IMG/VR virus record: IMGVR_UViG_3300023181_000025
Span: 1 to 64,000 of that record
Reading direction: 5' to 3' (one strand)
DNA length: 64,000 nucleotides
The notes beneath the pieces are model-generated. The model was not told where the DNA came from, made no database searches, and saw only the letters and a list, made by a program, of their open reading frames with translations. Within the stretch, counting starts at the first letter, position 1; every line of letters begins with the position of its first letter. The position numbers and the translations under genes were made by a program. Shown one piece after another: positions 7,710-36,729 of this stretch.

Positions 7710-7735
7710 TTCTCTTTTTAATAAATTGTATGTAA
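7710..7735 (+). promoter_or_regulatory. Putative late promoter
   Basis: TTCTCT-N15-TGTAA, ATG at 7747. Confidence 0.55.
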
Positions 7736-7746
7736 TATCTTAATAT

Positions 7747-7944
7747 ATGAAGAGTGACACTATTTTGGCAAGTCCCGACGAATCGGGTTGGTATTGGTTT
7801 AAAAAGAACAAGAAGTCTGACGTAGTTATTGTTTTTGTAAATGATGACGGAGAGGCAACAGCGACGACAGAAGATGGCTTTTCTTATATTTTAGATGATT
7901 TAATTGGTCTATGGAGTCTAATTAACCTCCCGGACGATTTTTAA
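7747..7944 (+). CDS. Hypothetical small protein
   Basis: P.ESGWYW motif seen in small phage proteins. Confidence 0.6.
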   Translation: MKSDTILASPDESGWYWFKKNKKSDVVIVFVNDDGEATATTEDGFSYILDDLIGLWSLINLPDDF

Positions 7945-7961
7945 TAAAATAAATTAATAAT

Positions 7962-8639
7962 ATGAAAAAAATAATTTTAGCCGCATTTTTCTGCGTATGC
8001 ACTTTTTCTTGCTCCCAAAAGGTTTCCCCTATTATTGGAATTCCTCCGGCCCCAGCTCAATCTCAGAGTGCCAGACCTAACGTGGAGAAAACCCAAGAGA
8101 GAATTGACAAGAGCCTTAATAATAATACCTCTATACAAAAAAATCTAAAGGAGCAAAATGACGCTCTCTTACAACAAAAAATTAATATTTCTGCGGCCCT
8201 TGCTCAAGCTGAAAAAATGAAGGAAAGGGCGCTTGCAAAACAAGCCATAACTGAATTAGAGGCCGAAAAGCACATTACGGAAATTAAAGCTATGGAAAGT
8301 CGCAATCTTTTTCTTGAGGGTATAAATAAAACAATGGCTGATACAGTTGTAGAACAAGCGTCTGAGTTACAGTCCGCCAAACAGGAGAACTCAAAAGCTC
8401 GGGAGCTTTTAATTTTAAGCGATAATGAAAAACTCGCACTTCGAGAACAAAATCTATTTTTATCTAAGTCTTTAGAGTTAAAGAATAAAGAAGTCGTGGA
8501 CCTTTCAGAAGAAAACAATAAAATTAACCAAAAATTAGCCAATGCAAAGGTATATAAAGGGTGGATTATTGGCGGAGCTTCATTGCTTTTAGTTGGAGGC
8601 GTGGTATTTGTCCTTTTAAAGATTTATAGACCTTTTTAA
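7962..8639 (+). CDS. Putative unimolecular spanin-like lipoprotein
   Basis: Signal peptide MKKIILAAFFCVCTFS-C (lipobox-like), long coiled coil, C-terminal TM helix WIIGGASLLLVGGVVFVLL. Confidence 0.55.
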   Translation: MKKIILAAFFCVCTFSCSQKVSPIIGIPPAPAQSQSARPNVEKTQERIDKSLNNNTSIQKNLKEQNDALLQQKINISAALAQAEKMKERALAKQAITELEAEKHITEIKAMESRNLFLEGINKTMADTVVEQASELQSAKQENSKARELLILSDNEKLALREQNLFLSKSLELKNKEVVDLSEENNKINQKLANAKVYKGWIIGGASLLLVGGVVFVLLKIYRPF

Positions 8640-8688
8640 TTATTATTTTGCATAAAAATACAAATTAAAGGTATTATTAAATAAGTAA

Positions 8689-9396
8689 ATGTTATTTGAC
8701 TTCCTTAAAGAACAGTCTGCAAATTTTAATTGGCTTCCCGAAGCTCTGGGCGTTCTCGCCGCAGTTTCTTTGGTGTTTAAGACGGTTAGAAAGTGGATTT
8801 TTGCAGCCTTTCGAGCCATATGCTCCTTTTTTACTTCCCCCTCAAAGACATATAAACTGGTCAATGATTTAACAACTAAATTGGCCAATGTTGAAGCAGT
8901 TTCAAATAATTCAGCAGGCAAAATACAAAATCTAGAAGATTTAATTGGTTATAATGGTGGGTCCGGCCTAATGGATAAGGTTGGTTATTTGCTAGGATAT
9001 CAGGCAAATGACTTTTGGTTTCGCGACCAACCCGGATTTATTTGTTCAGAACTAGGGGAAAACTTAGATACAACTCATTGCTATTGTAAGCTTTTAGGGG
9101 TTACTAATAGAACCGATTTAAATAATCGTAATTGGCAGGGCTTTGTAGATAAAGATCAGAACAAAGGCTATTACGAAGAATTTTTGGAAGTCGCCAAAAG
9201 ACGGGAAACATTTCGGCGCACTATTGGGTTTAAAGACTCAAATGGTAATGATACTGGAGTTTGGTTGGTTGTCGCTAATCCGATATCCTCAGATAAGGCA
9301 AAAGTGGCAAGATATATTGGATTATTGTATCCCTTTGACCCCACTTCAAAGCAAATAGCGGAAAAATATAAATGGCCGCTTATGCCTCCCTTATAA
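8689..9396 (+). CDS. Membrane protein with C-terminal PAS-like domain (holin candidate)
   Basis: N-terminal hydrophobic helix, coiled coil with NGGSGLMDKV, then PAS/PAC pattern (YCKLLG...W..FV...F.DSNG...WLVVANPI...YIG). Confidence 0.55.
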   Translation: MLFDFLKEQSANFNWLPEALGVLAAVSLVFKTVRKWIFAAFRAICSFFTSPSKTYKLVNDLTTKLANVEAVSNNSAGKIQNLEDLIGYNGGSGLMDKVGYLLGYQANDFWFRDQPGFICSELGENLDTTHCYCKLLGVTNRTDLNNRNWQGFVDKDQNKGYYEEFLEVAKRRETFRRTIGFKDSNGNDTGVWLVVANPISSDKAKVARYIGLLYPFDPTSKQIAEKYKWPLMPPL

Positions 9397-9404
9397 AAAT
9401 TCAT

Positions 9405-10142
9405 ATGAATAAAAAACAAGCTCGAAAACAGTCTAGTAATAAGGAAGATAAAAGTCCCTACGCTTTTCAGGGTAAAAAGCAAGATTTTAATATACCAATT
9501 ACAGAAAAAATACCTTGGACTGAAAAACAGTTGAGGTTTAATGAATTAGCTCAAAGTAAAGAATGCAAAATATTATTTGTGTCTGGTGTAGCGGGAACTG
9601 GAAAGTCGCTTTTAAGTGTCTATGCTGCCCTTAATGCAATTAATGCAAAGAAGGTCTCAGACTTGGTCTATCTTAGGTCCGCTGTAGAAAGCTCATCAAG
9701 TAAGCTTGGTTTTCTTCCCGGAACGGCGGAAGATAAGCTTTCTCCTTATCTTGAGCCCCTTATGGATAAACTTTCTGAGTTAATTGGCGAAGGGAATACA
9801 CAAGAAATCATAAAAAGACAATTAGTTTCCGCCCGGCCCATTAACTACTTAAGAGGTTGCCAATTTTCTGGTAAGTATGTTATTCTCGATGAAGCGCAAA
9901 ACCTCACTTTTACTGAAATGCAAACTTTTCTTACGAGGGTTGGCGAATTTAGTAAAGTTATTATTGCTGGTGACCCTATGCAAAGCGATATTGGAAACAG
10001 AAGCTGCTTTACAAAGGTTTTTGACTCGTTTGATAATGAAACTGCGCAAGAAAACGGAATCTATACCTTTAAATTTGGTAAAGAAGACATTGTTCGTTCT
10101 AAAATATTAAAATTTATTGTAGAAGTATTAGAAAATATTTAA
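9405..10142 (+). CDS. phoH: PhoH-family ATPase
   Basis: GVAGTGKS, LGFLPG, YLRG, ILDEAQN, GDPMQSD, DIVRS; probable start ATG 9405. Confidence 0.95.
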   Translation: MNKKQARKQSSNKEDKSPYAFQGKKQDFNIPITEKIPWTEKQLRFNELAQSKECKILFVSGVAGTGKSLLSVYAALNAINAKKVSDLVYLRSAVESSSSKLGFLPGTAEDKLSPYLEPLMDKLSELIGEGNTQEIIKRQLVSARPINYLRGCQFSGKYVILDEAQNLTFTEMQTFLTRVGEFSKVIIAGDPMQSDIGNRSCFTKVFDSFDNETAQENGIYTFKFGKEDIVRSKILKFIVEVLENI

Positions 10143-10151
10143 TAAAAATCA

Positions 10152-10177
10152 TTCTCATTAGTATTATTATAGTGTAT
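10152..10177 (+). promoter_or_regulatory. Putative late promoter
   Basis: TTCTCA-N15-TGTAT, ATG at 10188. Confidence 0.6.
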
Positions 10178-10187
10178 AGAAAACATT

Positions 10188-10595
10188 ATGAAAGTATTAG
10201 AGAAGATAAGATTTCAAAAGGAATATGTCGAAAAGCGTATCAAGCCCAAGTGTTTTTTTAATCCAGATGGGTCTGTTGCGGTTTTCGCAATTACTCAAGA
10301 AGATCAGTTGGTTCAAAAGTGGGTTTATGAAAAGGGCGCTGCCTTGAAAAACGAAGGTTTTTCTTTAAATAGCGAGACATACGATCAAATTCTGAAATTT
10401 ATAATGGAAGGCGGCTCCTTTAACGAGGCTCCGCCTGAAATTATTTTAGAACCTGAGGAACAAAAGCCTATCGTTCAAGAAGGCGTTAAAACGCCTTCTC
10501 AAGGCAATCGCTCCGAGATTATTGAGTTGTTAAAATCTAAAAAACTTAAAGTGGCAGAACTTCAAGAGATTTTGATTAAAATTTTAGAATTATGA
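10188..10595 (+). CDS. Hypothetical protein
   Basis: 135-aa ORF coupled to the next gene. Confidence 0.65.
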   Translation: MKVLEKIRFQKEYVEKRIKPKCFFNPDGSVAVFAITQEDQLVQKWVYEKGAALKNEGFSLNSETYDQILKFIMEGGSFNEAPPEIILEPEEQKPIVQEGVKTPSQGNRSEIIELLKSKKLKVAELQEILIKILEL

Positions 10596-10855
10596 ACCTT
10601 TATTGTCAAGAATGCGGTTCCAAAAACGTTTATTGTGGAGCGGAAAATAAGCCTATTGAATGTGAAGGTTGCGGAAACTTTTTTGTTACGGTAAAAGTCT
10701 CTATTGGGAAAAAAAATAAAAAAGAGGTCGTGGCAAACACTGAATTGGATATTTTTAGCGTTAGTGATCTTGTTGATCTTGTTGAAATTTCAAATATCGA
10801 AGAACCTAACCAACCTCGTTCCAGAAAACGTGCGCCAAGACAAAAAAAGAAATAA
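10592..10855 (+). CDS. Zn-ribbon protein
   Basis: CQECG...CEGCG, basic C-terminal tail. Confidence 0.7.
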   Translation: MNLYCQECGSKNVYCGAENKPIECEGCGNFFVTVKVSIGKKNKKEVVANTELDIFSVSDLVDLVEISNIEEPNQPRSRKRAPRQKKK

Positions 10856-10856
10856 T

Positions 10857-11543
10857 ATGTTTTCATTCGAAGAGAAAATTGAAGAAATTAACTTAGAAAT
10901 CTCCAAGAGGAAAAATAAGTGGAGACTTAATGCTTTGTCTTATATAGATTTTGAGGACGTTTCTCAGATCTTAAGAATTCATATATTCAATCAGTGGTCT
11001 AAATGGGATCAGGCTCGACCTCTGGCTCAGTGGCTTAATAAATTGATATCTAATCAAATAATTAATCTAATTAGAAATAATTATAGCAAGGTTGCTCCTC
11101 CTTGTAATAGTTGCGCTTATAATATGGGCGGAAATTCCTGTTCTTATACCCCTAGCGGCGAGAGGTGTAACGATTGTCCGTTGTATAAGGCTTGGTCTAA
11201 GAAAAAGAAATCCGCTTACAACCTAAAGCTGGCTGTCTCTTCTGACGCCGAAGATTATATTGAACCAAAGTCTTCTTCTTCCCAATTTGGCGATCAAATT
11301 GATTATGACGCATGTATGGAAAAAATTCATCTTTATATGAAACCAAAACTTACTTCCGCTCAATGGCGAATTTATGAGATGCTCATTATTAAGGGCATGG
11401 CGGACGAAGAAGTCGCCACGATTCTAAAGCTTAAAACAGTTGAAGAAAAAAGGGGGGCAGGCTATAGGCATTTTGCCAAGATGAGGGAGATTTTTTCTGT
11501 TTTTGCGAAGCAAATCATGGAAGAACAAGATATTTTGTATTAA
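10857..11543 (+). CDS. Phage-encoded ECF-like RNA polymerase sigma factor with Cys-rich insert
   Basis: Region-2-like DFEDVSQILRIHIF...LAQWLNKLISNQIINLIR; region-4-like LTSAQWRIYEMLIIKGMADEEVATIL; CxxC-x8-C-x8-CxxC between them; probable start ATG 10857. Confidence 0.7.
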   Translation: MFSFEEKIEEINLEISKRKNKWRLNALSYIDFEDVSQILRIHIFNQWSKWDQARPLAQWLNKLISNQIINLIRNNYSKVAPPCNSCAYNMGGNSCSYTPSGERCNDCPLYKAWSKKKKSAYNLKLAVSSDAEDYIEPKSSSSQFGDQIDYDACMEKIHLYMKPKLTSAQWRIYEMLIIKGMADEEVATILKLKTVEEKRGAGYRHFAKMREIFSVFAKQIMEEQDILY

Positions 11544-11552
11544 TTGTAAAAT

Positions 11553-13557: not shown

Positions 13558-13559
13558 TT

Positions 13560-16298
13560 ATGTGGACACCGGGATATCATTGTAGGACAGATAAGTTTAT
13601 CGACACAAATACTAAGTTGTCGGAGATTGAGGGGGACATAACTACAAAAGAGGCTCAGGTTGCTTTTGCGAAATTTTGTTGCGCGAACCCTCATTGGGCC
13701 GCAAAGATTTTAATGGGAATTGACTTATATCCTATTCAGGATGTCATGATTAGGGCGATGATGCAAAAGGATTTCTTTTTAGGTGTTTGTGGGCGGGGAT
13801 TCGGCAAATCTACAATTGCAGGGGTATTCTTGCCCTTATATGCTATATTTAATCCCGGAGTTAAGATAGGAATAACATCACAGACATTCCGTCAGTCGAG
13901 AAATATCTTCGAAAAAATCGAAGAAGCCATTGCCTCCCCCAAAGGAAAATTCCTAAAACAATGCCTGAATGGCCCCCCAAAGCACAACAATGATGCTTGG
14001 AGCATGAAATTTGGCACATCTGAAATTGTCGCCCTACCGTTAGGCTGTGTAACTGGAAATACCCTTATTCGAACTTCAAATGGTCTCAAACGCATCTCCG
14101 CGCTCGAACCAGAAATGCATACATATGAATACGGTGTAACTTATAAACCTTGGAAAAGGGGCTTATGTTGGGCCAATATAGATGAGCAGGTTGATACACT
14201 TGACGGTGTCTCACGATGCACAAATGTGCTATATAAAAGAGAAGAGGAGTGCCTTGAGCTTGTCTTGCGCGGGGGATTTGGCCTTCAGGGATCTAAAAAA
14301 CACAAGGTGTTGGTTTATTCTAAGGATGGAGAGCATCTATGGAAAGAATTATCACGAATTACACTAAAGGATTACGTCGCAATTGATGTCCGCGAAAGAT
14401 TCTCAAAACAACCAGAATTTAATTTAACTTCCGAAATTGGATATAAATACGGGTGCCAACAAGTATTTTCTAAAGCTACTGATGAAAGAATTTTAAACTG
14501 TTCTGAAAATTTCGGGCGTGGGTTCTTTGCGGGCATTTTCGAATCTGCCGGAGAATATTCGAGCAATGGATATGGTAATAAACCCTGTATTTCCGTAGCC
14601 ATGAAGAGTGAAGATATAGCTAAGGACGTTCAAATTGCGTGCCTGTCTTATGGTTTTGTAATTAAAAGAATGAAAAATAAACTATTTATTACTAAATTTA
14701 AACTTAGAAGTTTTCTTGAAAAGTTTCCCACTGTAAAGAAGAATTTAAAAAGTATACTCCCGGATATTCCCACGCCTTCTTATGGAGCCATTAGCTCTTC
14801 GGAAGCAGAAAAATATGACAAGGGGTTTATGTTTTGCAAAATCATTAGCAAAAAGAAGCTGGGGAAAGTTCCAGTATATGATTTGCGCGTCCCTGCTTAT
14901 AATAACTATATCTCGAATGGCTTCGTCTCCCATAATTCCGGGGATAAAATTCGGGGCTATCGTTTTAATTTGCTTGTTATTGACGAACTTTTGCTTCTTT
15001 CCGAGAAGGTTATTAATGAAGTTTTAATGCCTTTCATGGCTATTCAGGCTAACCCCCGCGAAAGGCAAAAAATAAGGGATGAAGAAACGGCTATGATTAA
15101 TGCGGGGGTCATGACTGAAGACGAACGCACAGTATTTTCTAGCAATAAACTTATAGGTCTTACTTCCGCGAGCTATCAATTTGAATATCTATACAAGATG
15201 TTCCAAGATTACAAAGACCAAATTTGTGACAAAGAAGCCAAGAATGTTTCACATGCCGTAATGCAACTGTCTTGCGAAATAGCTCCAATTGGTCTTTATG
15301 ACGAAAAGAATATTGAAATGGCTAAAAAAACCTTTAGTCAGTCGCAATACGACCGAGAGTATATGGCGCATTTTACCGGAGATAGCTCTGGATTCTTTTC
15401 CGCCAAGTCTTTACACGCTGTATCCTTAGAAAAGGGAGAGTTTCCAACTGTTTTGGTTAAAGGGGATAGAGTAAAAGACTATATATTGGCTATTGACCCT
15501 AACTATGACTCATCAGAAACCTCTGACGATTTCGCTATGTGCCTAGTAGAATTGGATCATGACGCTAGAACCGCAGTGATGGTTCACGGCTATGCGCTTG
15601 CAAGCTGCACCCTTCAAGAACGCATGGGATATGTAAAATATCTATTTGATAATTTTAATATTATATATATGATTGTAGATAGAGCGGCGGGAGCTAAATT
15701 TATTAAGGATATTAATGATTTAGAAGTTCTTGATTTCAAACTTGGCATCTTTGAGGCCGATTTTGATACCTTCAGTGAGGAAGAGTTGTTTGAAGCTCGA
15801 AAAAGCTATTCTAATGACACAAAAGTGAAAAATATAGTTCACGCGCAAAACTTCTCAGCCCAATGGATTAGATACGCTAACGAAACTCTGCAAGGGGCTA
15901 TAGAAAATAGAACAATCATGTTTGGTTCGCCTGTGGACGCCGAAGAAATATCTGTTGATTCATTGGCCCCGATAATTAAAGAGCTTAAATTTGACGATAC
16001 CGAATATAAGAATGATAGGGACAGTCTGAAAATGAAATTGGGCGATTTCGTAGATAGGCAAGCTATAATTATTGGAAAAACAAAACGCCAATGCGCTTTA
16101 ATTGAGGCGAGTAGTGGGGGCGGGGCAATGAAATTTGACTTGCCCCAATCCCTTAAAAAGCAAACTGGTCCCGATAAGGCCCGTAAAGATAGCTATTCTG
16201 CCTTATTGTTGGCCAACTGGGGTAAAGAATGCTATTTTAATATGATGAGCGCGCCTGTTAAGAAAAAAAATAGGATTTTACCTAGATTTTTGGTGTAA
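13560..16298 (+). CDS. terL: Terminase large subunit, intein-containing
   Basis: Walker A GRGFGKS, IRGYR..LVIDE Walker B, C-terminal RNase H-like nuclease (AIDP, SDD, KDSYSA). Confidence 0.9.
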   Translation: MWTPGYHCRTDKFIDTNTKLSEIEGDITTKEAQVAFAKFCCANPHWAAKILMGIDLYPIQDVMIRAMMQKDFFLGVCGRGFGKSTIAGVFLPLYAIFNPGVKIGITSQTFRQSRNIFEKIEEAIASPKGKFLKQCLNGPPKHNNDAWSMKFGTSEIVALPLGCVTGNTLIRTSNGLKRISALEPEMHTYEYGVTYKPWKRGLCWANIDEQVDTLDGVSRCTNVLYKREEECLELVLRGGFGLQGSKKHKVLVYSKDGEHLWKELSRITLKDYVAIDVRERFSKQPEFNLTSEIGYKYGCQQVFSKATDERILNCSENFGRGFFAGIFESAGEYSSNGYGNKPCISVAMKSEDIAKDVQIACLSYGFVIKRMKNKLFITKFKLRSFLEKFPTVKKNLKSILPDIPTPSYGAISSSEAEKYDKGFMFCKIISKKKLGKVPVYDLRVPAYNNYISNGFVSHNSGDKIRGYRFNLLVIDELLLLSEKVINEVLMPFMAIQANPRERQKIRDEETAMINAGVMTEDERTVFSSNKLIGLTSASYQFEYLYKMFQDYKDQICDKEAKNVSHAVMQLSCEIAPIGLYDEKNIEMAKKTFSQSQYDREYMAHFTGDSSGFFSAKSLHAVSLEKGEFPTVLVKGDRVKDYILAIDPNYDSSETSDDFAMCLVELDHDARTAVMVHGYALASCTLQERMGYVKYLFDNFNIIYMIVDRAAGAKFIKDINDLEVLDFKLGIFEADFDTFSEEELFEARKSYSNDTKVKNIVHAQNFSAQWIRYANETLQGAIENRTIMFGSPVDAEEISVDSLAPIIKELKFDDTEYKNDRDSLKMKLGDFVDRQAIIIGKTKRQCALIEASSGGGAMKFDLPQSLKKQTGPDKARKDSYSALLLANWGKECYFNMMSAPVKKKNRILPRFLV
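14046..14936 (+). mobile_element. Intein (297 aa) in TerL with degenerate LAGLIDADG-like region
   Basis: PLG|CVTGNTLI...GSKKHKV...VYDLRV..NNYISNGFVSHN|S; internal FFAGIFESAG. Confidence 0.9.
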
Positions 16299-16307
16299 AC
16301 AAGCCTT

Positions 16308-18158: not shown

Positions 18159-19631
18159 ATGGCACATAGAGATTTTAAATATACGAGACGGTTTGAGTCA
18201 AAGGCTAGATTTGACTTGGGAACTTGGAGGGAGGCTTCGGCTAGCAAGTCAATTATTGCTAAAGCTAGCTTAGAGGATTTGAGATCCTTACTTCCGGCTA
18301 ATGAGGTTATTGAAGACGACAACGATCTTCTTTATACCGCTTTTAATGCCGCTGTTGTAAACCTTATCAATGCAAACGATCATGGTATTGGGACCGAAAC
18401 CGCTCTTGCCGTATCAAAATACTTTGTAAAAAGGCACTTAAATCTTGAACACGACCGCAATAGTGTGGTTGGCCATATTATTACACAGGGGTTTAGTTCT
18501 TTCGGAGATAATAAAATCCTTCAGGCCGAAGAGATTTCGGGGAATGACCCTTTTAATATTTGCTTGGGAGGGATTGTTTATAGATATGTGCGAGACTATG
18601 TTGCCCAATTTATTGAAGAGGCCGCTGACGAAAAAAGCCCTTGGTATCAAGAGGTAGCGTCGTCTTGGGAAATTGGATTTAATGATTTTGATATTGTTCT
18701 TGGCTCTAAAAGGGTAAAGGACGCAGAGATAATTTCAAATCCAGAACAAGTTAAAGAATTTACTCCGCTATTGGCTTCTGAGGGCGGAGAAGGCTTTACT
18801 AAAGACGGGGTTCCAGTTTATATGCTAATTAAAGGTGATGATGCAAGGCCTGTTGGTTGCGCCTTTACTACAACTCCTGCTGCTGCGGTTAAAGGAGTCT
18901 TAGTTGCATCGTCTAAACTAGAAAGTCTTGAAAATAAAAATTCTCAAGAAATTATAACTCTTTCCAGCTCAATTTTGGAGAAATTGGCAGAAACGAATAA
19001 AACAATTGAAAAACTAAGCATTTCTACTTCACAAAATAAAATAATTAATGTAACTAAAAATAGCATGAAAATTAAATCTATTGACCAAATTACTCCAGAC
19101 TTCTTGAAAGAAGCTGAAGCAAGCGACGTTAGAGATTTCATTACTCAAACACTTGCAGATAAAGCTTCCGAATTTTCTACTCAAGTTTCCGAAAAGGAAA
19201 CCGAGAAGAAAGGCATTCAGTCCGAATTGGAAGAAGCTAAAGCAAAGGTCACTGAATTGGAATCTAAAGTTGCTTCTCTTAATGATATCATCTCCGCTAA
19301 GGAAAAGGAAGAAGCTTTCAATGTCCGTATGGATGAGATTGATTCTACCTTTAAGCTTACTGAAGAACAAAAAAAATCAGTTGCCTCAAAAATCAAAACT
19401 CTCGACAGCGATGAGTCCTATAAGACTTGGAAGAAAGAATTCTCTCTTTTCGCTACCTTTAAGGGCGACGAAGTTGATGAAACTGAAAGTGACGACGAAG
19501 AAGACGAGGTCAAGAACCTAAAAGAAGCCAAGGCTTCCAAAGGAAAACTTCCTAATGCCGCTGATTCGAAAGCAAATAGTGATATTGACGAATTGGCAAG
19601 TGGATTAGAAATCCTTTCTTTCAGAAAATAA
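18159..19631 (+). CDS. Prohead protease with fused C-terminal scaffold domain
   Basis: NANDH, LNLEH...VVGH, ASSWE, GCAFTTTPA protease-like motifs; acidic coiled-coil C-terminus. Confidence 0.75.
   Translation: MAHRDFKYTRRFESKARFDLGTWREASASKSIIAKASLEDLRSLLPANEVIEDDNDLLYTAFNAAVVNLINANDHGIGTETALAVSKYFVKRHLNLEHDRNSVVGHIITQGFSSFGDNKILQAEEISGNDPFNICLGGIVYRYVRDYVAQFIEEAADEKSPWYQEVASSWEIGFNDFDIVLGSKRVKDAEIISNPEQVKEFTPLLASEGGEGFTKDGVPVYMLIKGDDARPVGCAFTTTPAAAVKGVLVASSKLESLENKNSQEIITLSSSILEKLAETNKTIEKLSISTSQNKIINVTKNSMKIKSIDQITPDFLKEAEASDVRDFITQTLADKASEFSTQVSEKETEKKGIQSELEEAKAKVTELESKVASLNDIISAKEKEEAFNVRMDEIDSTFKLTEEQKKSVASKIKTLDSDESYKTWKKEFSLFATFKGDEVDETESDDEEDEVKNLKEAKASKGKLPNAADSKANSDIDELASGLEILSFRK
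19028..19053 (+). promoter_or_regulatory. Internal putative late promoter for a nested scaffold gene
   Basis: TTCACA-N15-TGTAA inside the protease ORF; in-frame ATG at 19065. Confidence 0.6.
19065..19631 (+). CDS. Nested in-frame scaffolding protein (188 aa)
   Basis: In-frame ATG 11 nt after the promoter motif; coiled-coil acidic sequence. Confidence 0.55.
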   Translation: MKIKSIDQITPDFLKEAEASDVRDFITQTLADKASEFSTQVSEKETEKKGIQSELEEAKAKVTELESKVASLNDIISAKEKEEAFNVRMDEIDSTFKLTEEQKKSVASKIKTLDSDESYKTWKKEFSLFATFKGDEVDETESDDEEDEVKNLKEAKASKGKLPNAADSKANSDIDELASGLEILSFRK

Positions 19632-21368: not shown

Positions 21369-21396
21369 ACACAAGAAATAAAAACTTAAAACATTG

Positions 21397-21423
21397 ATGG
21401 GGAGCTTTTCGCTCCCCATTTTT
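21397..21423 (+). terminator. Rho-independent terminator after MCP
   Basis: ATGGGGAGC-ttttc-GCTCCCCAT plus T-run. Confidence 0.85.
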
Positions 21424-21424
21424 G

Positions 21425-21450
21425 TTCTCATAATTATAATTAAAGTGTAA
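21425..21450 (+). promoter_or_regulatory. Putative late promoter
   Basis: TTCTCA-N15-TGTAA immediately after the terminator, ATG at 21459. Confidence 0.65.
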
Positions 21451-24183: not shown

Positions 24184-24208
24184 TTCACAAAATAACAAAT
24201 AAGTGTAA
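24184..24208 (+). promoter_or_regulatory. Putative late promoter
   Basis: TTCACA-N14-TGTAA upstream of the tail tube gene. Confidence 0.65.
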
Positions 24209-25378: not shown

Positions 25379-25404
25379 GAGCCCGCAAGAAATTGCGGCT
25401 TTTC
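25379..25404 (+). terminator. Rho-independent terminator after tail tube
   Basis: CCGCAA-gaaa-TTGCGG hairpin plus CTTTT. Confidence 0.7.
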
Positions 25405-25416: not shown

Positions 25417-25441
25417 TTCACATTTTTGTTAATTCGTGTAA
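25417..25441 (+). promoter_or_regulatory. Putative late promoter
   Basis: TTCACA-N14-TGTAA, ATG at 25462. Confidence 0.65.
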
Positions 25442-25461: not shown

Positions 25462-25731
25462 ATGAACGACTATAGAAGTATTGTCAAGGACGCGGCGAAA
25501 AGAAAATTAGTTGATCTAACTAAGGCCTTTTTAGAAATTATTGACGAATTAAAGAAAGAAGACGGCGAAAAACTTAAAAATTTTTCTTCTATTTCATCTA
25601 AATGGATGAATAGCGAGGAAGTTGAGGTTTTGATGCCGTTTTTAGCGTTAATGACAGACTGTAAAAAAGATATTCTTCGAAAAAGGATACTTGATAAAGC
25701 TGGCGAACTTAGTCGGGAATTAGATAATTAA
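25462..25731 (+). CDS. Hypothetical tail-region protein
   Basis: Probable start ATG 25462 (MNDYRS), downstream of promoter motif. Confidence 0.6.
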   Translation: MNDYRSIVKDAAKRKLVDLTKAFLEIIDELKKEDGEKLKNFSSISSKWMNSEEVEVLMPFLALMTDCKKDILRKRILDKAGELSRELDN

Positions 25732-27302: not shown

Positions 27303-27346
27303 TTGCTTATTTTAGTGTAAATATAGCATAGGGTCGGAAAGGAATT

Positions 27347-30300
27347 ATGGAAGACAATTTTAATGTAAATTTAGGGCTGGTTACAACCCGTGCTGAATCG
27401 GCGGCTTTTGCTGCTGCGGATAGAATTGAGAAAAGATTTTCGAACATTAAAATTGGAACTACTTCCAAGAATTCTTTTGGAGCCTTAAATAAGGACGCAG
27501 CCAACTTTAATAGGACTCTCGCGGGAGTAAATGATAGATTCATTGCTTTTGCGGCTTCAGCTAGTGTAATTTACGGGCTTTCTAACGCTTTTAAATCTTT
27601 ATATGCTAACTCTATTAAGGTTGAAATGGCTATGGCCCAAATCCAAGTCAACATCAGAGCTACAAGCAAAGAACTTGGAAGCTTGGAAAGTGGACTATTT
27701 TCTGTTGCCTCTTCTACTGGACAATCATTCTTTGCCGCTGCTGATGCCGCTGCTGAGTTCGCTCGTCAAGGTCTTAAGGCAAACAAAATTCTAGAGGCTA
27801 CTAATGCAGCCCTTGTTCTTACGCAAACTACAGGTCTTGATACCGTTAATAGTGTTAAGTCTCTCACCGCTATCGTTAACACCTTCGGTGAGGCCGCTGG
27901 CTCTTATGCAGATATTGTTAATAAGATGGCCGCTGCCGATACAAGCTTCGCTGTGTCGTCTAAAGACCTTGCTGAGGGCGTCAGTCGAGTTGGTTCAGTT
28001 GCCTTAGATGCGAATGTAAGCTTCGAAGAGCTTCTTGCCACTATCACAGCCATTCAACAAAGAACATCTCGTGGAGGTAACACTATTGGTAACTCCTTGA
28101 AGAGTATTTTTACCCGTCTTCAACGCGACGACAACTCAACCGCTATCGGAAATCTTGGAATTGAAACTAAAAACGCAGACGGTTCCTTTAAAAACCAAAT
28201 TGAGGTATTAAAACAACTATCTCTTGCTCTTAATAATGCCACGGATACGCAGGCCGCTCAAATCGCTGAAATGGTTGGTGGCGTTTATCAAATTAACATC
28301 GTTAAGTCTCTATTCCAAGATTTAGGTCAAGAGGTAAGCGTTTATTCGGAAGCACTTAATACGGTTAGAAATGCACAGAATGAAGCTTTCGTAAAAAGTA
28401 ATTTCTTAAGTGAAACGAATGTTTCTACTATTGTTAAAGCGAAAAACGCCTTTGTTGAATTGAGTTCTGCGGTTGGAAAGCTAGGCCTCAATGAGGCTTC
28501 TAAGGGTTTAGTTGGAAGCCTTACCGAGATTACTCAAGGGGCCACCAAACTACTTAAGCCAATCGAAGGAGCTAATGGCGGAGATGCCACTATAGGTGAA
28601 AAATTCAAGGATATTGAATCTGGGGTCGCAACGATTTCGCAATCAGTTGTTAAAGGATTTATTGATGCTCTTAGCGGGCCGGGTCTTGCTATTTTAATTA
28701 AAGCTTTTGCTCAAATTTCTGGAAGCGTAATCGGTAAACTCAAAACCGACTTAGGAAGTAGTATTTATTCAAATAATAGTGGATCTCAATCCAGACTTAA
28801 AGCTCTTCAAGAACAAAATGCAGCCGTTTTAAGAATTACTGAAGCCGAGTCTCGCGAAAACGTCCTTTTGCAGCAGGGAAATTCTGAATTGTTAAAAAGA
28901 CTTGTTATTGTGCGTGATATAGCTTTAGCCCAGTCCGCTATGGGGCTATCTGCTAGCTTTGCCGGACCTTATAGAAAATCTTCGCCTCCAGTAGCTCCTA
29001 GAAAAAACTTTGCCGGTGGGTTCTCGCCTTTCAGTAGGGAAGCTTATGATATAGCTAATGGTGTTGGGGGTGCAAGCAAAGGAGCAAGGCCTGTCGATGC
29101 ATACATCAAAACCTCTCCAAGAAAATCTGAAAAAGTTGTTCTTAACTCAGACGAATATATTGTAAAAGATTATATGGGGTCCGGCGCGGATGCTGTATTT
29201 AATAAAAATATGGTTCGTGACGCCGGGGGAATTAATAATGTTCGCTCTATGGGTGACGTAAGAAGGGCTTTTGCGGGAGGAAGAATTCCAACTCAAAGCC
29301 TCGCAAGAGGGAGTGTCCCTTTCGGCCAAAGAAGTGATGAAGAGTTGAGAAAAATTATTGAAAGGGGCTCTAATAAAATACAAGTTCAGGGAGCTATCCG
29401 CGAACTCCAAAAAAGAGGGGTAAATACGGCTAGTCTTCGACTGAAAGCTCCTAAGTCAGAAGTTTATCGCAGAAATCAAGATAGACCTTCAGTAAACTTG
29501 ATAAGAAGCAATAAAGATCAAGAGGCTATTCCTTTGGGATATGACCCTCTTCGGGGGGTGGCTTCACCGACAAGCCAACAATTCTTGCAAAAGCAAGCGG
29601 AAAGAGAAAGATTGATAAGAATCAACTCGGAGTATGAAAGAGCCAATAGGAAACCTTTGGAGGCTGTTCCTGCGTATGTTGCGCCTTCAAAACCATCAGA
29701 TAGACTCTCTTCGGAACAAAAAAGATTATTGCACGAAAAAATAAGCAATAAGACAAGCTATCAGGACCGCATAAACAATGCTTTCAGCGGAAATAAACCC
29801 GTAAGAGATCAGGCGTTAAAAAATGCTATAAGTGGATCGTCTTCTTCTAAAAAAATAGATTCATTAAATGCAGAGAATCAAAATGCTTTTATTCAAGCAG
29901 TTCAAAATACGCCCAATATCAACAAAGCAAAGATTGATGAGTTAGCTTCTCAGTATAACGTTCCTAAAAACAGCGGCATTGTAAAGGACGTAAAAAAAGA
30001 TATCCGCTCGCAAACTAATTCTAGAATTTCTGCAAAATTCGACAAATATGCTTTTGGCGCAGCTTTTGCGGGAAGCTCTATTGGTAATGCTGCCGGGAGT
30101 GAACGCTTAGGAACTGCGGTAAGCGATATAGCTACATTTTCGTCTTTGGGTTCGGCATTTGGACCAATAGGAATTGCGGCGGGAGCTTTAATTGGAACAT
30201 TCAAGGCTCTTGGATCGGAAATACAAAGCTCTGCAATTCCGCTTGAAAGTTTTTCGAAAGAGATAGAAAAGTTTGGAGCACAAACAGAAAAAGAAAGCAA

Positions 30301-33199: not shown

Positions 33200-33204
33200 A
33201 ATAT

Positions 33205-35076
33205 ATGTTGGCTTTTAAACACGCTCAAACTCTTTCTTTGTCCCATAAATTGGAATATTTGGGGGACGCTTTTGCCTATAGGGCGGTTCAGGATATTGTT
33301 ATTCGGGGCAAAATGATTAGTGACCGGGCTTATGATAATTCATTGGGGAGTTATTTTTCTATTGTATATACTGACCAATCCGGGGACAATCAATTTGTGG
33401 CTGTGGAAGGAGAAGATTATGATTTTGTAGATGATGATTGGATAGTTGAGAATAAATGGTTTCCTATTGAGAGTGCCCAAAACATTGAGACTCCAGAGCA
33501 GAATTCATTTTTTGATATTACACCTTTTGCATCTACAGTTTCTGAAGGTGGAACTATTTCGGGGGCAGACCATTATTCTCCACTTTACGATATTTGGGAT
33601 GGGGCTAATAAAATAAAGAAAGCCTTTGGAGAATTTCAAGAAATAATTTTAAATGGTGTTTCTTTGGGGTCTGGTAGAGTTGTGTCTGCAAGTTTTCCAG
33701 AGTCTAGAGACTTTCGAAAAGGCGAATATGAAATAACTTTAGAAATTTATAAACCAGTCGATCTATATAATTGGGAAGGAACTGGTTATTTTGATAAGCC
33801 AGACCCCGAGCTAATGAAGCTTGTTCAAAATCTTGATAGCACTTTTTCCTTCGACAAAGATAAAAACAATGTAATTTCTTATTCTAAAAATTTAGGGTTT
33901 AGTTTGATTAACTCAGGATTAAGCGAAGAGAGCTACTTAAATACTGCAAAGACCATTGCCTCGGGACTCTTTTATAAAGACCCAAATTTTAATAATTTTA
34001 TATCTCAGTATCCTGATTTTTATGAAAATAATGGAAATCGGGTGTTTAACGAAAGTTATAATCCATTAGAGGGTTCATTTTCCTTTTCGGAAATTTTCCA
34101 AGGTCCAACTAGTGGAAAAAAATATTTTTGGGACGTATCTTACTCGCTCACAACTCAACAAAATGGCGCAACTAGGGCTACTGAGAACGGAACTATTCGT
34201 GGCGTTTCGAAGAATAGTTTTGAAGTCGCTAATTCTGGTTACAATTCAATAAAGGGTTCGCGGGAACAAAGAATTAAAGATTTTTATGGATCTTACAAGG
34301 ATTCTTTGTGTGAAGATACTCTTATATTTAAAGCAGCTTCAAAAGCTAGCGATATTCCCGCAGGAATTATTACATATTCATTTAATTATGAAGAAGATCC
34401 TTTTGGCGAACTATGCTATGATATTGTGAGGGCTTCCGATATTCAAAAAGATGCAGACGGTGAATACACACTAACAGAAAATGGTTCTGTTAGAAATACT
34501 TGTGAATTAACTACTTCTGGAAAGTTACAAAAAGCTGTAGATTATTTTAAAAATAATATAGAAACTGGAATTAAAAGTAGGTTATACTCTGACTATGAGG
34601 CGGCCTCTTTTGGTTGTGGATGTAGCGGGGCCGCAAATATAGCAGATTTATCCCTAATTTCCACCGAAGAGGAGTATTCTAGCTTTCGAGGCGCATTTGA
34701 CTATGCGTATACATACAAAACGAGTTGCGGATTTGCTATTAATGATTATTTTTTAACGTCAAAAGAAAGGCAGGTCAAAGACACTCTTCATAATGTTGGG
34801 TTGCAAATAACCCCCTACAGCGGAGAGATAGCACAAAAACAAAATACTTCCTCTTTGATAGAGGAGACTCAGACAATTTCTGTAATTGGGAGAGAAGAAA
34901 ATATAGAAATAGAGCAATATCTGGAAGAGTGTATATCTAATATTACTCCGCCGGTTTCCTCTACATTTTTTATGAATAATGCTAGTTATTTTTTTGATCC
35001 TGATAACTCAAAAATGGAAATGAGTGTAATTTACCAATACACCGGATTTAGAAACTTCCTAGATATTAATGTTTAA
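33205..35076 (+). CDS. Tail-tip/distal tail protein
   Basis: First gene after TMP; repeated beta modules (TENG.IRG). Confidence 0.55.
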   Translation: MLAFKHAQTLSLSHKLEYLGDAFAYRAVQDIVIRGKMISDRAYDNSLGSYFSIVYTDQSGDNQFVAVEGEDYDFVDDDWIVENKWFPIESAQNIETPEQNSFFDITPFASTVSEGGTISGADHYSPLYDIWDGANKIKKAFGEFQEIILNGVSLGSGRVVSASFPESRDFRKGEYEITLEIYKPVDLYNWEGTGYFDKPDPELMKLVQNLDSTFSFDKDKNNVISYSKNLGFSLINSGLSEESYLNTAKTIASGLFYKDPNFNNFISQYPDFYENNGNRVFNESYNPLEGSFSFSEIFQGPTSGKKYFWDVSYSLTTQQNGATRATENGTIRGVSKNSFEVANSGYNSIKGSREQRIKDFYGSYKDSLCEDTLIFKAASKASDIPAGIITYSFNYEEDPFGELCYDIVRASDIQKDADGEYTLTENGSVRNTCELTTSGKLQKAVDYFKNNIETGIKSRLYSDYEAASFGCGCSGAANIADLSLISTEEEYSSFRGAFDYAYTYKTSCGFAINDYFLTSKERQVKDTLHNVGLQITPYSGEIAQKQNTSSLIEETQTISVIGREENIEIEQYLEECISNITPPVSSTFFMNNASYFFDPDNSKMEMSVIYQYTGFRNFLDINV

Positions 35077-36700
35077 AATTCTTTATAATGGCGACGAGGT
35101 TTTCGACGGTTTATCCCCTACGCCTTTCGTCGAAAGGAACTCAGAAAGCATATACAACTCTAAAAAGTATATGGAGATGGATTCTATTACCCTTAATGGG
35201 GTAATTACGGGAGAATGCGTGCAAAATGATAATGAATTTGAGGGATTTTACAATAAAGCCAGCCTTTTAATAGATAGGTTTTCAAAATCTTTTGGAGACC
35301 TTGCGATTCTTGAGGAGCTACCGGACCATTTATCTTATCTATATTCAGGGCGAGCTATTGTGCGAGCTATTGATTTCCCAGAAAGTTATTTTGCAGGATT
35401 ATTGCCTTATTCTATAACTTTTGACCTCTACAAAGAAGAGGATTTTATAAATTATGGAATTTTAGATCCAAGCCAAGAAATTCAATTTCAACAAAATGAT
35501 AATGGCACCGTTACGATTAATAAATCTACATCCGCTAGGGGCTTAAATACAGATTTAAAGGCGTTAGATAACGCACGTAGTTTTGTCCAGCAATTGAAAG
35601 GTTGGAACTCTTCTTTGTCTCCACTATTCATTGACTCCACCAACGTTTCCGAGGCTCTTTTAATTAAAGAGGATGAAGAAGTTGACCGTGCCAACTGTGT
35701 TTATAGCCTTAACGAAACTTGGTTATATGACCCATACGGTCAACAAACTGAAAATTCTTTCTATCGAGTTACAACAACAATAAACTCGGGGGCAGAGGGA
35801 AATGCTATTTCCCTAGAGGGAACCCTAGAAGGCCGAGCTATGTCTTCGTGGTTAGACTTAAGACAGGAATTTACTGAAATAAATTTTTTGCAGATTGCTG
35901 AAGAAGCTTATTTTGATGCGGGTTTTGAAGGCGAGCTTTTTATAAGACCTATAGGCAAAAGCATATCGGAAAATGCCAACGAGAAAAGCATATCTTTTTC
36001 TATGGAATATTCTGATACTATACTAGAAGATCCTTATATAACAGATAATTTTAGGGTTACTTGGGACATACAAAATAATAAAAAATGCGCATCAGCACAA
36101 GTTTTAATTTCTTCTATTGATGAGTGTTATTCTGCTAGATGGAATAAAGTCAATGATTTTTACGAGACTTTTCAATTAAAAGATTGGATTGATCAAAGAT
36201 GGCAAGACTACGGATATGAGGGAAATCTTTCCAATTCTTTCCAATCTAAGTCTGTTTCATTTGATCAAAAATCTTCCACCATTAGTATTTCTGCGACCTT
36301 GTGTGAAAAAAAGATTGTAATCCCTGCACATTTAGACGACATAAATTATAATGTGCAAATTATTCCCTCTATGCCTACTTATATTCCTTTTCAGGGTTTA
36401 GATTGTGGGGGGGCATTCACAGTTCAAAAGCTCAAGGGCCTGAAAAGACAATCTATTACAATTCAAGGAGACGCCCTGATATCTGACTGTTCTACCAAAG
36501 AGCAGGCTTTAGAGAGTTTAAAACTATATATAAACTCATTAAAATTTCAATATTTAAATGGGGGAGATGCTTTTATGAGTGGAAACGATATACGTTACGG
36601 GTCTGGTGCGGCTTCTAAAAAGATATATTTTAGTTTTTCTTGGAATGAAAAAAAATCCACAAGTTTATTTGGAGAAGAGCTTCTAAATTCCCCTATTTAA
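35069..36700 (+). CDS. Tail-tip protein, apparent paralogue of the upstream gene
   Basis: Shared patterns (GR.V.S/I.FPES, Q..NG.VTI...ARG). Confidence 0.5.
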   Translation: MFKILYNGDEVFDGLSPTPFVERNSESIYNSKKYMEMDSITLNGVITGECVQNDNEFEGFYNKASLLIDRFSKSFGDLAILEELPDHLSYLYSGRAIVRAIDFPESYFAGLLPYSITFDLYKEEDFINYGILDPSQEIQFQQNDNGTVTINKSTSARGLNTDLKALDNARSFVQQLKGWNSSLSPLFIDSTNVSEALLIKEDEEVDRANCVYSLNETWLYDPYGQQTENSFYRVTTTINSGAEGNAISLEGTLEGRAMSSWLDLRQEFTEINFLQIAEEAYFDAGFEGELFIRPIGKSISENANEKSISFSMEYSDTILEDPYITDNFRVTWDIQNNKKCASAQVLISSIDECYSARWNKVNDFYETFQLKDWIDQRWQDYGYEGNLSNSFQSKSVSFDQKSSTISISATLCEKKIVIPAHLDDINYNVQIIPSMPTYIPFQGLDCGGAFTVQKLKGLKRQSITIQGDALISDCSTKEQALESLKLYINSLKFQYLNGGDAFMSGNDIRYGSGAASKKIYFSFSWNEKKSTSLFGEELLNSPI

Positions 36701-36703
36701 AAG

Positions 36704-36729
36704 TTCACAAAATACCTTATTTGCTGTAA
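36704..36729 (+). promoter_or_regulatory. Putative late promoter
   Basis: TTCACA-N15-TGTAA. Confidence 0.65.

What the first reader, a model, noticed from the sequence alone, without database searches (positions are those of the whole stretch)
7710..36729. Conserved bipartite promoter TTCWCA-N14/15-TGTAA upstream of morphogenesis genes
Seen: eight complete or single-mismatch copies at 7710, 10152, 18122, 19028, 21425, 24184, 25417 and 36704, each 8-27 nt upstream of a start codon. Two follow terminators directly. Core-only GTGTAAA copies precede the portal (16293), the tape measure (27315) and the minus-strand gene starting at 7657. The glycan and SSB/phosphatase blocks instead carry TTGAC(A/T)-N17 sigma70-type promoters. 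Inference: this is the late promoter class, with ECF-like short spacing, read by the phage sigma factor at 10857. One copy (10152) heads the operon containing that sigma gene, suggesting positive autoregulation.
Basis: partly seen in the sequence, partly recalled or inferred. Interest (0 to 1): 0.68.

Follow-up and report, generated by a model that had tools for sequence, protein, structure and literature searches.

The report
Conserved phage late-promoter motif
A two-part DNA signal (TTCNCA, 14-15 bases, TGTAA) sits in front of the virion-building genes of an uncultured 211-kb phage and of its many relatives, which all carry the same unusual phage sigma factor. It is very probably that factor's promoter: a new example of a well-known way phages time their late genes.

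Summary
Two directly follow terminators. The window is the first 64 kb of a 211-kb phage contig from leaf litter.

The invariant part is GTGTAA(A/T). It is the most enriched intergenic word here and across 85 related loci (179 seen, 28 expected). TTCNCA is a real second element, offset 14-16 nt, found mainly in the morphogenesis module. It is kept at orthologous positions in relatives, including an intragenic site where synonymous codon positions preserve it.

The 228-aa protein at 10857 models as a two-domain, ECF-like sigma with a conserved Cys4 insertion. At least 564 viral contigs encode relatives. A complete 209-kb relative has it as its only detectable sigma and also has GTGTAA promoters.

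Corrections:
- The core also heads ribonucleotide reductase, tRNA, homing-endonuclease and IS genes, so the class is not purely morphogenetic.
- A second, orphan sigma-like gene (71466-71972) has an early-type promoter.
- "Short ECF-like spacing" depends on the alignment chosen.
- No transcription start data exist.

Verdict: a real promoter class and a new member of a known kind. The link to this sigma is likely but unproven.

The parts
7710..7735 (+). Promoter-like site TTCTCT-N15-TGTAA (one mismatch). It heads the operon 7747-10142, which ends in PhoH.
   Evidence: PhoH identified; the orthologous site in L002 is an exact TTCACA-N14-TGTAA
7673..7679 (-). Core-only GTGTAAA, 22 nt before the minus-strand operon 7657->3105 (62 aa, an 845-aa fibre-repeat protein, a pyruvyl transferase).
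10152..10177 (+). Promoter-like site TTCTCA-N15-TGTAT (one mismatch). It heads the operon of a 135-aa gene, an 87-aa gene, sigma228, a 361-aa gene, an ERCC4 nuclease and TerL.
   Evidence: equivalent sites before the sigma operon in L002 (2519), L003 (9254) and L004 (9333)
10857..11543 (+). sigma228: a 228-aa sigma-70-family protein with ECF-like sigma2 and sigma4 domains and a Cys4 insertion in the linker. It is the proposed reader of the motif.
16293..16299 (+). Core-only GTGTAAA, 15 nt before the 609-aa gene that follows TerL (putative portal, by position only).
   Evidence: GTGTAA/GTGTAT at the same place in L002, L003 and L005
18122..18146 (+). Exact site TTCTCA-N14-TGTAA, 12 nt before gene 18159-19631 (490 aa).
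   Evidence: orthologous site in L002 at 10329
19028..19067 (+). Exact site TTCACA-N15-TGTAA inside gene 18159-19631, 11 nt before the in-frame ATG at 19065 (M303). This looks like an internal promoter for a nested 188-aa C-terminal product.
   Evidence: conserved in 14 related loci, with conservation at synonymous codon positions
21396..21420 (+). Intrinsic-terminator-like hairpin after the capsid gene, directly before the 21425 site.
   Evidence: the capsid protein 20244-21368 is Mu GpT-like
21425..21450 (+). Exact site TTCTCA-N15-TGTAA, 8 nt before gene 21459.
   Evidence: orthologous sites at L002 13641 and L003 19634
24184..24208 (+). Exact site TTCACA-N14-TGTAA, 27 nt before gene 24236-25354.
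25383..25398 (+). Terminator-like hairpin directly before the 25417 site.
25417..25441 (+). Exact site TTCACA-N14-TGTAA, 20 nt before the ATG at 25462.
27315..27321 (+). Core-only GTGTAAA, 32 nt before the tape-measure gene 27347-33199.
   Evidence: PF10145 hit
36704..36729 (+). Exact site TTCACA-N15-TGTAA, 26 nt before the GTG start at 36756. It heads the distal tail/baseplate-side block that runs to 42176.

Best explanation
TTCNCA-N14/15-TGTAA is the strong, bipartite form of a phage-specific promoter class. Its invariant element is a -10-like box, GTGTAA(A/T).

Proposed mechanism:
- Host core RNA polymerase carrying the phage's two-domain, ECF-like sigma (sigma228, 10857-11543) binds the box through sigma2. 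Where TTCNCA is present, sigma4 binds it.
- Transcription starts a few bases downstream. Many of the mRNAs therefore begin at or just before their ATG, i.e. they are leaderless or nearly so.
- The bipartite form restarts transcription at operon heads along the morphogenesis module, twice immediately after terminators.
- It also drives an internal in-frame start that would give a nested 188-aa product.
- One copy heads the operon that contains the sigma gene, giving positive feedback once some sigma has been made.

Shown here: the motif, its enrichment, its fixed geometry, its conservation at DNA level across relatives, and the sigma fold.

Inferred: that it is a promoter (about 0.85), that sigma228 is its reader (about 0.6), and autoregulation (about 0.5).
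For: 1. Enrichment and orientation.
- Six exact copies against 0.18 expected, all co-directional with genes.
- (T)AGTGTAA is, together with TTGACA, the most over-represented intergenic word in the 211-kb genome (z about 7.7).

2. Two-part nature.
- Among 50 promoter-positioned TGTA[AT] cores, TTCNCN falls at offset 14-16 in 11. No other offset has more than 2.
- In relatives the peak is at 15.
- The -35-bearing form is concentrated in the morphogenesis region: 8 of 11, against 3 of 15 core-only sites (Fisher p = 0.015).

3. Conservation in relatives.
- Gene order PhoH, two small genes, sigma, 360-aa gene, ERCC4, TerL, portal-position gene, 490-aa gene, 193-aa gene, capsid is kept in L002-L005.
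- The motif sits at the same junctions. L004 uses TTCCCA instead of TTCACA at 7 sites.
- Over 85 loci (0.98 Mb), GTGTAA is the top intergenic 6-mer: 179 seen, 28 expected, z = 28.

4. Selection acts on the DNA, not the protein.
- The intragenic copy is kept in 14 relatives as TTC[AC]CA-N15-TGTA[AT], followed by an in-frame ATG.
- The codon before Ser always ends in T although its amino acid varies. Ser is only TCA or TCC, and Val is only GTA.

5. It behaves as a promoter, not a translation signal.
- It occurs at operon heads and directly after terminators.
- It also occurs 13 and 20 nt before tRNA-Met and tRNA-Val genes.
- Start codons peak 14-16 nt after the G of GTGTAA. The TTGACA-class promoters show the same leaderless geometry.

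6. The sigma.
- The profile shows ECF-type region 2 motifs and a C-terminal helix-turn-helix.
- The model has pLDDT 78.5.
- All top PDB matches are sigma factors: sigma2 residues 1-78 at rmsd 2.4 A (Z 8.1-8.2), sigma4 residues 150-227 at rmsd 2.2-3.2 A (Z about 7).

7. Co-occurrence of sigma and motif.
- At least 564 viral contigs encode relatives.
- The complete 209-kb relative G001 has the sigma228 orthologue as its only Sigma70_r2 match. It carries GTGTAA in 29 of 322 upstream windows and 0 of 135 coding controls.
- A promoter-positioned core lies within 1.3 kb upstream of the sigma gene in 36 of 65 loci.
Against: - There are no transcription start, RNA or biochemical data. The only runs holding this DNA are leaf-litter DNA metagenomes.
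- A second sigma-like gene (71466-71972, 168 aa) lies behind an early-type TTGACA promoter and could read some or all of these sites.
- Many core sites lack TTCNCA, and two carry TTGACA/TTGACT instead (81478, 171515). The -35 element is therefore not obligatory, and some sites may be dual-use with host sigma-70.
- If the sigma gene depends only on its own promoter class, the first molecules need another source. No clear host-type promoter lies upstream of it on the + strand.
- The window protein's Pfam Sigma70_r2 score (21.5 bits) is below the 24-bit cut-off, and the structural Z-scores are modest.
- Gene calls used for the statistics are simple longest-ORF calls.
- The host is unknown.
Confidence: 0.6

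Rival explanations
1. The motif is a promoter, but it is read wholly or partly by the other phage sigma-like protein (168 aa, 71466-71972). That gene is expressed early from a host-type promoter. This would be a SPO1-like cascade in which sigma228 then reads only the TTCNCA-bearing subset, or something else again.
For: - The 168-aa ORF matches Sigma70_r2 (E = 1e-4), and its nearest Atlas clusters are sigma factors.
- It is headed by TTGACA-N17 plus a -10-like box. That would solve the problem of how the first sigma228 is made.
- Core-only and TTCNCA-bearing sites form two subclasses with different gene sets.
Against: - It has no homologue among 5.8 billion proteins except itself.
- It is absent from five related records, including the complete 209-kb G001. 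G001 still has GTGTAA promoters and shows only the sigma228 orthologue as a Sigma70_r2 match.
- The motif is clade-wide; this protein is not.
Confidence: 0.15
2. Host sigma-70 holoenzyme reads these sites with help from a phage activator or appropriator (T4 MotA/AsiA-like or Mu C/P2 Ogr-like). The activator binds TTCNCA or GTG. One candidate is the 174-aa helix-turn-helix protein at 171743-172267, whose own gene carries an exact copy.
For: - TTCACA differs from TTGACA by one base.
- TTGACA/TTGACT occupy the same position at 81478 and 171515.
- If the -10 is read as TAAATA, the spacer is 16-17 nt.
- A helix-turn-helix gene is headed by an exact motif at 172300(-).
Against: - The invariant bases G-T-G-T are not part of any sigma-70 -10 consensus. 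TAAATA matches TATAAT at only 3 of 6 positions and lacks the T at -7.
- The early class in the same genome uses a clear TAnnnT box, so the two classes are sharply distinct.
- A dedicated two-domain sigma is conserved with the motif across the clade.
Confidence: 0.12
3. The element acts at RNA level, not as a promoter. It would be a translation-initiation or processing signal placed at a fixed distance before start codons in a genome that hardly uses Shine-Dalgarno sequences.
For: - Start codons sit at a narrow distance (mode 14-16 nt) from the core.
- Only about 10% of genes have a Shine-Dalgarno-like word.
Against: - The element is absent from genes inside operons and present at operon heads and right after terminators.
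- It precedes tRNA genes, which are not translated.
- It has a second element 14-15 nt upstream, typical of -35/-10 geometry.
- The TTGACA class shows the same short distance to the ATG, which is explained by leaderless transcripts.
Confidence: 0.05

Closest known systems
Coliphage phiEco32 gp36 (ECF-family sigma) and its middle/late promoters TAATGTATA; the related phage 7-11
   Same: - A phage-encoded ECF-like sigma redirects host core polymerase to phage-specific promoters before structural genes.
- The consensus shares an (A/G)TGTA core (PMC4331800).
- Early genes use host sigma-70 promoters.
- A PhoH gene is present in both genomes.
   Different: - There is no detectable sequence relationship between the sigma228 family profile and gp36 (hhalign probability 0.2%).
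- The phiEco32 promoters are described as a single -10-like element. Here a -35-like TTCNCA at a fixed offset is conserved.
- sigma228 has a Cys4 insertion.
- The genome is a 211-kb phage with a tape-measure protein and a Mu GpT-like capsid, not a 77-kb podovirus.
T4 gp55/gp33 late transcription (late promoter TATAAATA)
   Same: - A short A/T-rich -10-type box close to late-gene starts. The own-genome consensus TGTAAATA differs from TATAAATA at one position (my recollection of the T4 consensus).
- Many sites work without a -35 element.
   Different: - gp55 is a minimal sigma without sigma4 and needs gp33 and the sliding clamp. sigma228 models with both sigma2 and sigma4, and a subset of promoters has a conserved -35-like element.
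- No gp33 or gp55 homologue was sought or found here.
- The phage is not T4-like; it has no gp23-type capsid.
Bacillus phage SPO1 sigma cascade (gp28, then gp33/gp34)
   Same: Possibly two phage sigma-like proteins, one made early; distinct promoter classes for temporal control.
   Different: The second sigma-like protein here is an orphan that relatives lack. No third promoter motif was found, so a cascade is not shown.
Bacterial group 4 (ECF) sigma factors
   Same: - Two-domain sigma2-sigma4 architecture. The best structural matches are M. tuberculosis SigH and SigL and E. coli sigmaE.
- Region 2 sequence motifs.
- The gene sits in an operon headed by its presumed own promoter.
   Different: - The promoter lacks the usual ECF 'AAC' -35 and 'CGT' -10 signatures.
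- The inter-domain linker is about 70 aa and holds four invariant cysteines.
- No anti-sigma partner was identified.
- The Pfam score is below the cut-off.
Nested scaffold/protease genes such as lambda C/Nu3
   Same: An in-frame internal start in the gene after the portal-position gene would give a C-terminal 188-aa product.
   Different: - Here the internal start has its own conserved promoter-like motif rather than only an internal ribosome site.
- The function of the 490-aa protein is not established: no Pfam or PHROG match.

Membership tests
Sigma-70 family (for the 10857 protein) | Region 2 (sigma2) domain recognisable by sequence | tested here: inconclusive
   PF04542 E = 2e-4 at 21.5 bits, below the 24-bit cut-off. 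Many homologues carry precomputed PF04542 hits. The family profile aligns to SigR, SigE/W and CnrH region 2 at E = 0.16-0.8.
Sigma-70 family (for the 10857 protein) | sigma2 and sigma4 folds | tested here: met
   AlphaFold2 model with pLDDT 78.5. Residues 1-78 superpose on ECF sigma2 domains at rmsd 2.4 A (Z 8.1-8.2). Residues 150-227 superpose on SigD and CnrH sigma4 at rmsd 2.2-3.2 A (Z about 7). All top matches are sigma factors. The Z values are modest for helical domains.
Group 4 / ECF sigma factors | Only sigma2 and sigma4, joined by a short linker, no region 1.1 or region 3 | tested here: inconclusive
   Two domains, and the top hits are ECF sigmas. However, the linker is about 70 aa with a conserved Cys4 cluster (C83, C86, C95, C107), which is not typical.
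Group 4 / ECF sigma factors | Cognate promoter with an 'AAC' -35 and a 'CGT'-type -10 | tested here: not met
   The consensus here is TTC[A/T/C]CA and (G)TGTAA.
Group 4 / ECF sigma factors | Co-transcribed anti-sigma factor | not tested
   The two small conserved genes upstream (10188-10595 and 10592-10855) have no Pfam or PHROG match. No binding test was run.
Bacterial-type promoter (functional class) | Primary transcripts start a few bases downstream of the -10 element | not testable with these tools
   No RNA run holds the sequence. Only indirect support exists: the fixed distance to start codons and tRNA 5' ends.
Bacterial-type promoter (functional class) | Strand-specific, intergenic or operon-head location, two elements at a fixed spacing, conserved in relatives | tested here: met
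phiEco32 gp36-type phage sigma | Sequence homology to gp36 | tested here: not met
   hhalign of the family profile against gp36: probability 0.2%. tblastn against 50,697 phage records found no match.

The most novel reading that the evidence does not exclude
sigma228 defines a large, uncharacterised family of phage sigma factors: at least 564 viral contigs from soil, freshwater and marine samples, with no cultured member found. It has a Cys4 (zinc-ribbon-like) module between sigma2 and sigma4. The family would read its own bipartite promoter TTCNCA-N14/15-TGTAA and produce largely leaderless late mRNAs. It would also use an intragenic copy, kept by selection on synonymous sites, to express a nested head-assembly protein. 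In effect this is a self-contained, orthogonal sigma/promoter system shared by a whole clade of large uncultured phages.
Probability: 0.45. Interest if true: 0.65.

Novelty: new member of a known kind. Interest (0 to 1): 0.5.

Why it matters
- It gives a sequence rule for finding operon heads and temporal classes in a large clade of uncultured, often jumbo, phages whose structural proteins mostly escape Pfam and PHROG.
- It nominates a compact sigma/promoter pair that could be tested as an orthogonal expression switch.
- It shows a clean case of a promoter embedded in a coding sequence and preserved through codon choice.
- It points to a phage lineage whose early and late genes are both built for leaderless translation, which constrains what the unknown hosts can be.

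Tried and rejected
- Megablast of 20 kb, and tblastn of the sigma and the capsid, against 50,697 phage records gave no match. No cultured relative could be named.
- PHROG and Pfam scans of about 30 module proteins recognised only TerL (with an intein), the ERCC4 nuclease, PhoH and the tape measure. 'Portal' and 'protease/scaffold' therefore rest on position only.
- A search for public RNA runs found only three leaf-litter DNA metagenomes. Read laying was therefore not used, and transcription starts could not be mapped.
- I tried to infer the host from the phage's IS605-type TnpB. It is 79-89% identical to small MAG contigs binned to Lishizhenia, a Woesearchaeote and Marmoricola. These are inconsistent and probably mis-binned phage DNA. 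One sigma homologue is labelled Maribacter. I rejected both as host evidence.
- The Bacteroidota-type promoter TAnnTTTG is not enriched.
- A search for a third promoter motif in 63 upstream regions lacking both classes showed nothing obvious by eye.
- Loose regex counting of TTCNCN-N14/15-TGTAN over all 85 loci gave 57 hits on the + strand and 46 on the - strand, so it is uninformative without positional filtering. It was replaced by the offset and upstream-window analyses.
- I checked whether the exact copy at 188801(-) is a promoter. It overlaps the ATG of its gene, so I treat it as doubtful.
- Covariation between sigma4 residues and the TTCACA/TTCCCA variants was looked at but is too thin to claim.

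Full report
**What the window is.** The 64-kb window is the first part of a single 211,168-bp virus contig (CheckV estimates it 100% complete). GC content is about 37%. The only public runs that hold it are leaf-litter DNA metagenomes.

The contig has no nucleotide or protein match among 50,697 deposited phage genomes. The + strand from about 7.7 to 42 kb carries these genes in order:
- PhoH
- two small genes
- a 228-aa sigma-like gene
- a 361-aa gene
- an ERCC4 nuclease
- an intein-containing large terminase
- a 609-aa gene in the portal position
- a 490-aa gene
- a 193-aa gene
- a Mu GpT-like major capsid protein
- about ten unassigned genes
- a 1950-aa tape-measure protein
- further large genes

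Calling it a morphogenesis module is therefore justified, although most of its proteins escape Pfam and PHROG.

**The observation.**
- All sites are present as described. Six are exact TTC[AT]CA-N14/15-TGTAA. The 7710 and 10152 sites each have one mismatch.
- All are on the + strand, with TGTAA ending 8-27 nt before a start codon.
- Markov simulations expect 0.18 exact copies in 64 kb and 0.62 in the whole genome, against 6 and 8 observed.
- The pattern was chosen after looking at the data, so I also ran unbiased word counts. Genome-wide, the two most over-represented intergenic words are TTGACA and (T)AGTGTAA. There are thus two promoter-like classes.
- Hairpin-plus-T-run terminators at 21396-21420 and 25383-25398 sit directly before the 21425 and 25417 copies.

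**Anatomy.** The invariant part is GTGTAA(A/T), usually preceded by a T-rich run and an A.

TTCNCN is a genuine second element. Among 50 promoter-positioned TGTA[AT] cores in the genome, it ends 14, 15 or 16 nt upstream in 4, 5 and 2 cases. No other offset has more than 2. Eight of those 11 lie in the morphogenesis region, against 3 of 15 core-only sites (p = 0.015).

Core-only sites outside the module head the following:
- ribonucleotide reductase
- an AAA/VWA pair
- a GIY-YIG homing endonuclease
- a LAGLIDADG homing endonuclease
- a gp9/10-like fibre protein
- an IS605/IS607-type element
- tRNA genes

The class is therefore phage-specific but not purely morphogenetic. The bipartite form is its strong, late-module version.

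**Evidence from relatives.** The sigma-like protein has more than 120 metagenomic homologue clusters, and at least 564 IMG/VR contigs encode a relative.

Four close relatives (46-66% identical sigma) keep the gene order and carry the motif at the same junctions:
- before the sigma operon
- before the portal-position gene
- before the 490-aa gene
- after the capsid gene's terminator

L004 uses TTCCCA-N14/15-(C)TGTAA at seven sites. Over 85 loci (0.98 Mb), GTGTAA is by far the top intergenic word on the sigma strand: 179 seen, 28 expected, z = 28. Start codons peak 14-16 nt after its G.

The complete 209-kb relative G001 carries GTGTAA in 29 of 322 upstream windows and in none of 135 coding controls.

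**The strongest single result is the intragenic copy at 19028.** It lies 869 nt into the 490-aa gene and precedes the in-frame ATG at 19065. Fourteen related loci have TTC[AC]CA-N15-TGTA[AT] at the equivalent place, followed by an in-frame ATG that would give a 188-243-aa product. At the codon level:
- The codon before the Ser always ends in T, although its amino acid varies (I, T, D, S, V).
- Ser is only TCA or TCC.
- Gln is only CAA.
- The codon before Val always ends in T.
- Val is only GTA.
- The 15-nt spacer varies freely.

Selection is therefore acting on the DNA signal, on both elements, and on their spacing.

**Promoter rather than RNA signal.** The element is found at operon heads and after terminators, not before every gene. 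It also lies 13 and 20 nt before tRNA-Met and tRNA-Val genes.

The short, fixed distance to the ATG matches the genome's other class. TTGAC[AT]-N16-18-TAnnnT is followed by an ATG 6-9 nt later in about 20 genes, and only about 10% of genes have a Shine-Dalgarno-like word. Both classes therefore look built for leaderless or near-leaderless mRNAs. This is inference; no 5' ends are available.

**Who reads it.**
- *The sigma228 protein.* The 10857 protein scores just under Pfam's Sigma70_r2 cut-off. Its family profile shows ECF-type region 2 motifs and a C-terminal helix-turn-helix.
- *Its structure.* The AlphaFold2 model (pLDDT 78.5) matches only sigma factors. The sigma2 domain superposes at rmsd 2.4 A and sigma4 at 2.2-3.2 A, with ECF sigmas on top. 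A two-domain sigma fits a bipartite promoter.
- *An unusual feature.* The linker is about 70 aa long and holds four invariant cysteines.
- *Co-occurrence.* The motif travels with this protein across the clade. In G001 it is the only Sigma70_r2 match.
- *A rival reader.* The window's genome encodes a second sigma-like protein (71466-71972) behind an early-type promoter. It has no homologue anywhere and is absent from five relatives.
- *Other helix-turn-helix proteins.* One at 171743-172267 is itself headed by an exact copy. The other exact copy, at 188801(-), overlaps its gene's ATG and is doubtful.

**Spacing.** Counting from TTCNCA to TGTAA gives 14-15 nt. If the box is instead aligned so that TAA(A/T)TA is the -12..-7 hexamer, the spacer is 16-17 nt, which is canonical. 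That alignment is what the early-class distance to the ATG would suggest. ECF promoters are not short-spaced either (general knowledge). The 'short ECF-like spacing' point is therefore not established.

**Autoregulation.** A promoter-positioned core lies within 1.3 kb upstream of the sigma gene in 36 of 65 loci that have enough flank, and in all the close relatives that were checked. This fits positive feedback.

The source of the first sigma molecules is unexplained. No clear host-type promoter precedes the gene on the + strand. Weak sigma-70 recognition, read-through, or the 168-aa protein are possibilities.

**Comparison with known systems.**
- The nearest characterised analogue is phiEco32 gp36 with its TAATGTATA promoters (PMC4331800). 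The logic and an (A/G)TGTA core are shared. The proteins are not detectably related, and a -35 element is added here.
- T4 gp55 (TATAAATA) and the SPO1 sigmas are more distant analogues.
- A survey of 224 jumbo phages found sigma factors only in its T4-like group 2 (PMC7824862). This phage, with a Mu GpT-like capsid and a DnaE-type polymerase, does not resemble that group.

**Verdict.** The feature is real and conserved, and it is almost certainly a promoter class. The assignment to sigma228 is the best-supported reading, at about 0.6. It is a new member of a known kind: a phage sigma with its cognate promoters.

Noticed in passing
G000 genome-wide; in the window at 2235(+), 42186(+) and 52656(-): Early-type promoters TTGAC[AT]-N16-18-TAnnnT are followed by an ATG only 6-9 nt later, often as 'cccATG'. 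This implies leaderless mRNAs for dozens of genes. Only about 10% of genes have a Shine-Dalgarno-like word. The 209-kb relative G001 shows the same design, with a conserved AAAAGAT spacer and TGTATAAT.
   Followed up: partly
G000:C1:71466-71972 (+) = L006:1369-1875: A second sigma-like gene (168 aa; Sigma70_r2 E = 1e-4; nearest Atlas clusters are sigma factors) sits behind a TTGACA-N17 promoter. It has no homologue in 5.8 billion proteins and is absent from five related records.
   Followed up: yes
window 10857-11543 (residues 83-107 of the protein): Four invariant cysteines (C83, C86, C95, C107) lie in the linker between sigma2 and sigma4, across all 44 aligned homologues. This looks like a zinc-ribbon-like insertion, which is unusual for a sigma factor.
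   Followed up: partly
window 13560-16298 (+): The large terminase is interrupted by an intein with a LAGLIDADG domain. Orthologues in L002, L004 and L005 also have it, while L003's terminase (619 aa) does not.
   Followed up: no
window 18159-19631 (+), internal ATG at 19065: A nested in-frame gene would give a 188-aa C-terminal product from its own promoter-like site. The arrangement is conserved in 14 relatives. It is reminiscent of nested protease/scaffold genes, but the protein has no family match.
   Followed up: yes
G000:C1:91899-91973 (+) = L092:7899-7973: One of about 20 phage tRNA genes has a CUA anticodon, i.e. an amber suppressor (ARAGORN labels it Pyl). TAG is the rarest stop codon (26 of 366 called genes) and is not used at all in the late module (28 TAA, 1 TGA). 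No gene needs TAG read-through to stay open.
   Followed up: partly
G000:C1:92176-94908 (+); also 84069-85411 (-) and 100167-101177 (-): Mobile elements inside the phage each sit behind a GTGTAA-type promoter: a MerR-resolvase plus IS605 OrfB/TnpB pair, a GIY-YIG homing endonuclease, and a LAGLIDADG homing endonuclease. The TnpB is 79-89% identical to small MAG contigs binned to unrelated taxa, which are probably mis-binned phage DNA.
   Followed up: partly
G000:C1:81458-81565 and 171495-171520: Hybrid sites carry a perfect TTGACA or TTGACT at the -35 position of a GTGTAA box. The first lies 13 nt before tRNA-Met. These may be dual-use promoters, active with both host and phage sigma.
   Followed up: no
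window 1-2000: The first 2 kb have 47% GC against about 37% elsewhere and contain a 327-aa ORF (703-1686). This is compositionally foreign DNA at the contig end. I did not examine it.
   Followed up: no
window 52691-55273 (-) and 59948-61459 (-): The replication block on the minus strand encodes a short (860-aa) DnaE-type DNA polymerase III alpha and a DnaB helicase. Glycosyltransferase and pyruvyl-transferase genes flank it (42222-52131 and 3517-4890).
   Followed up: no
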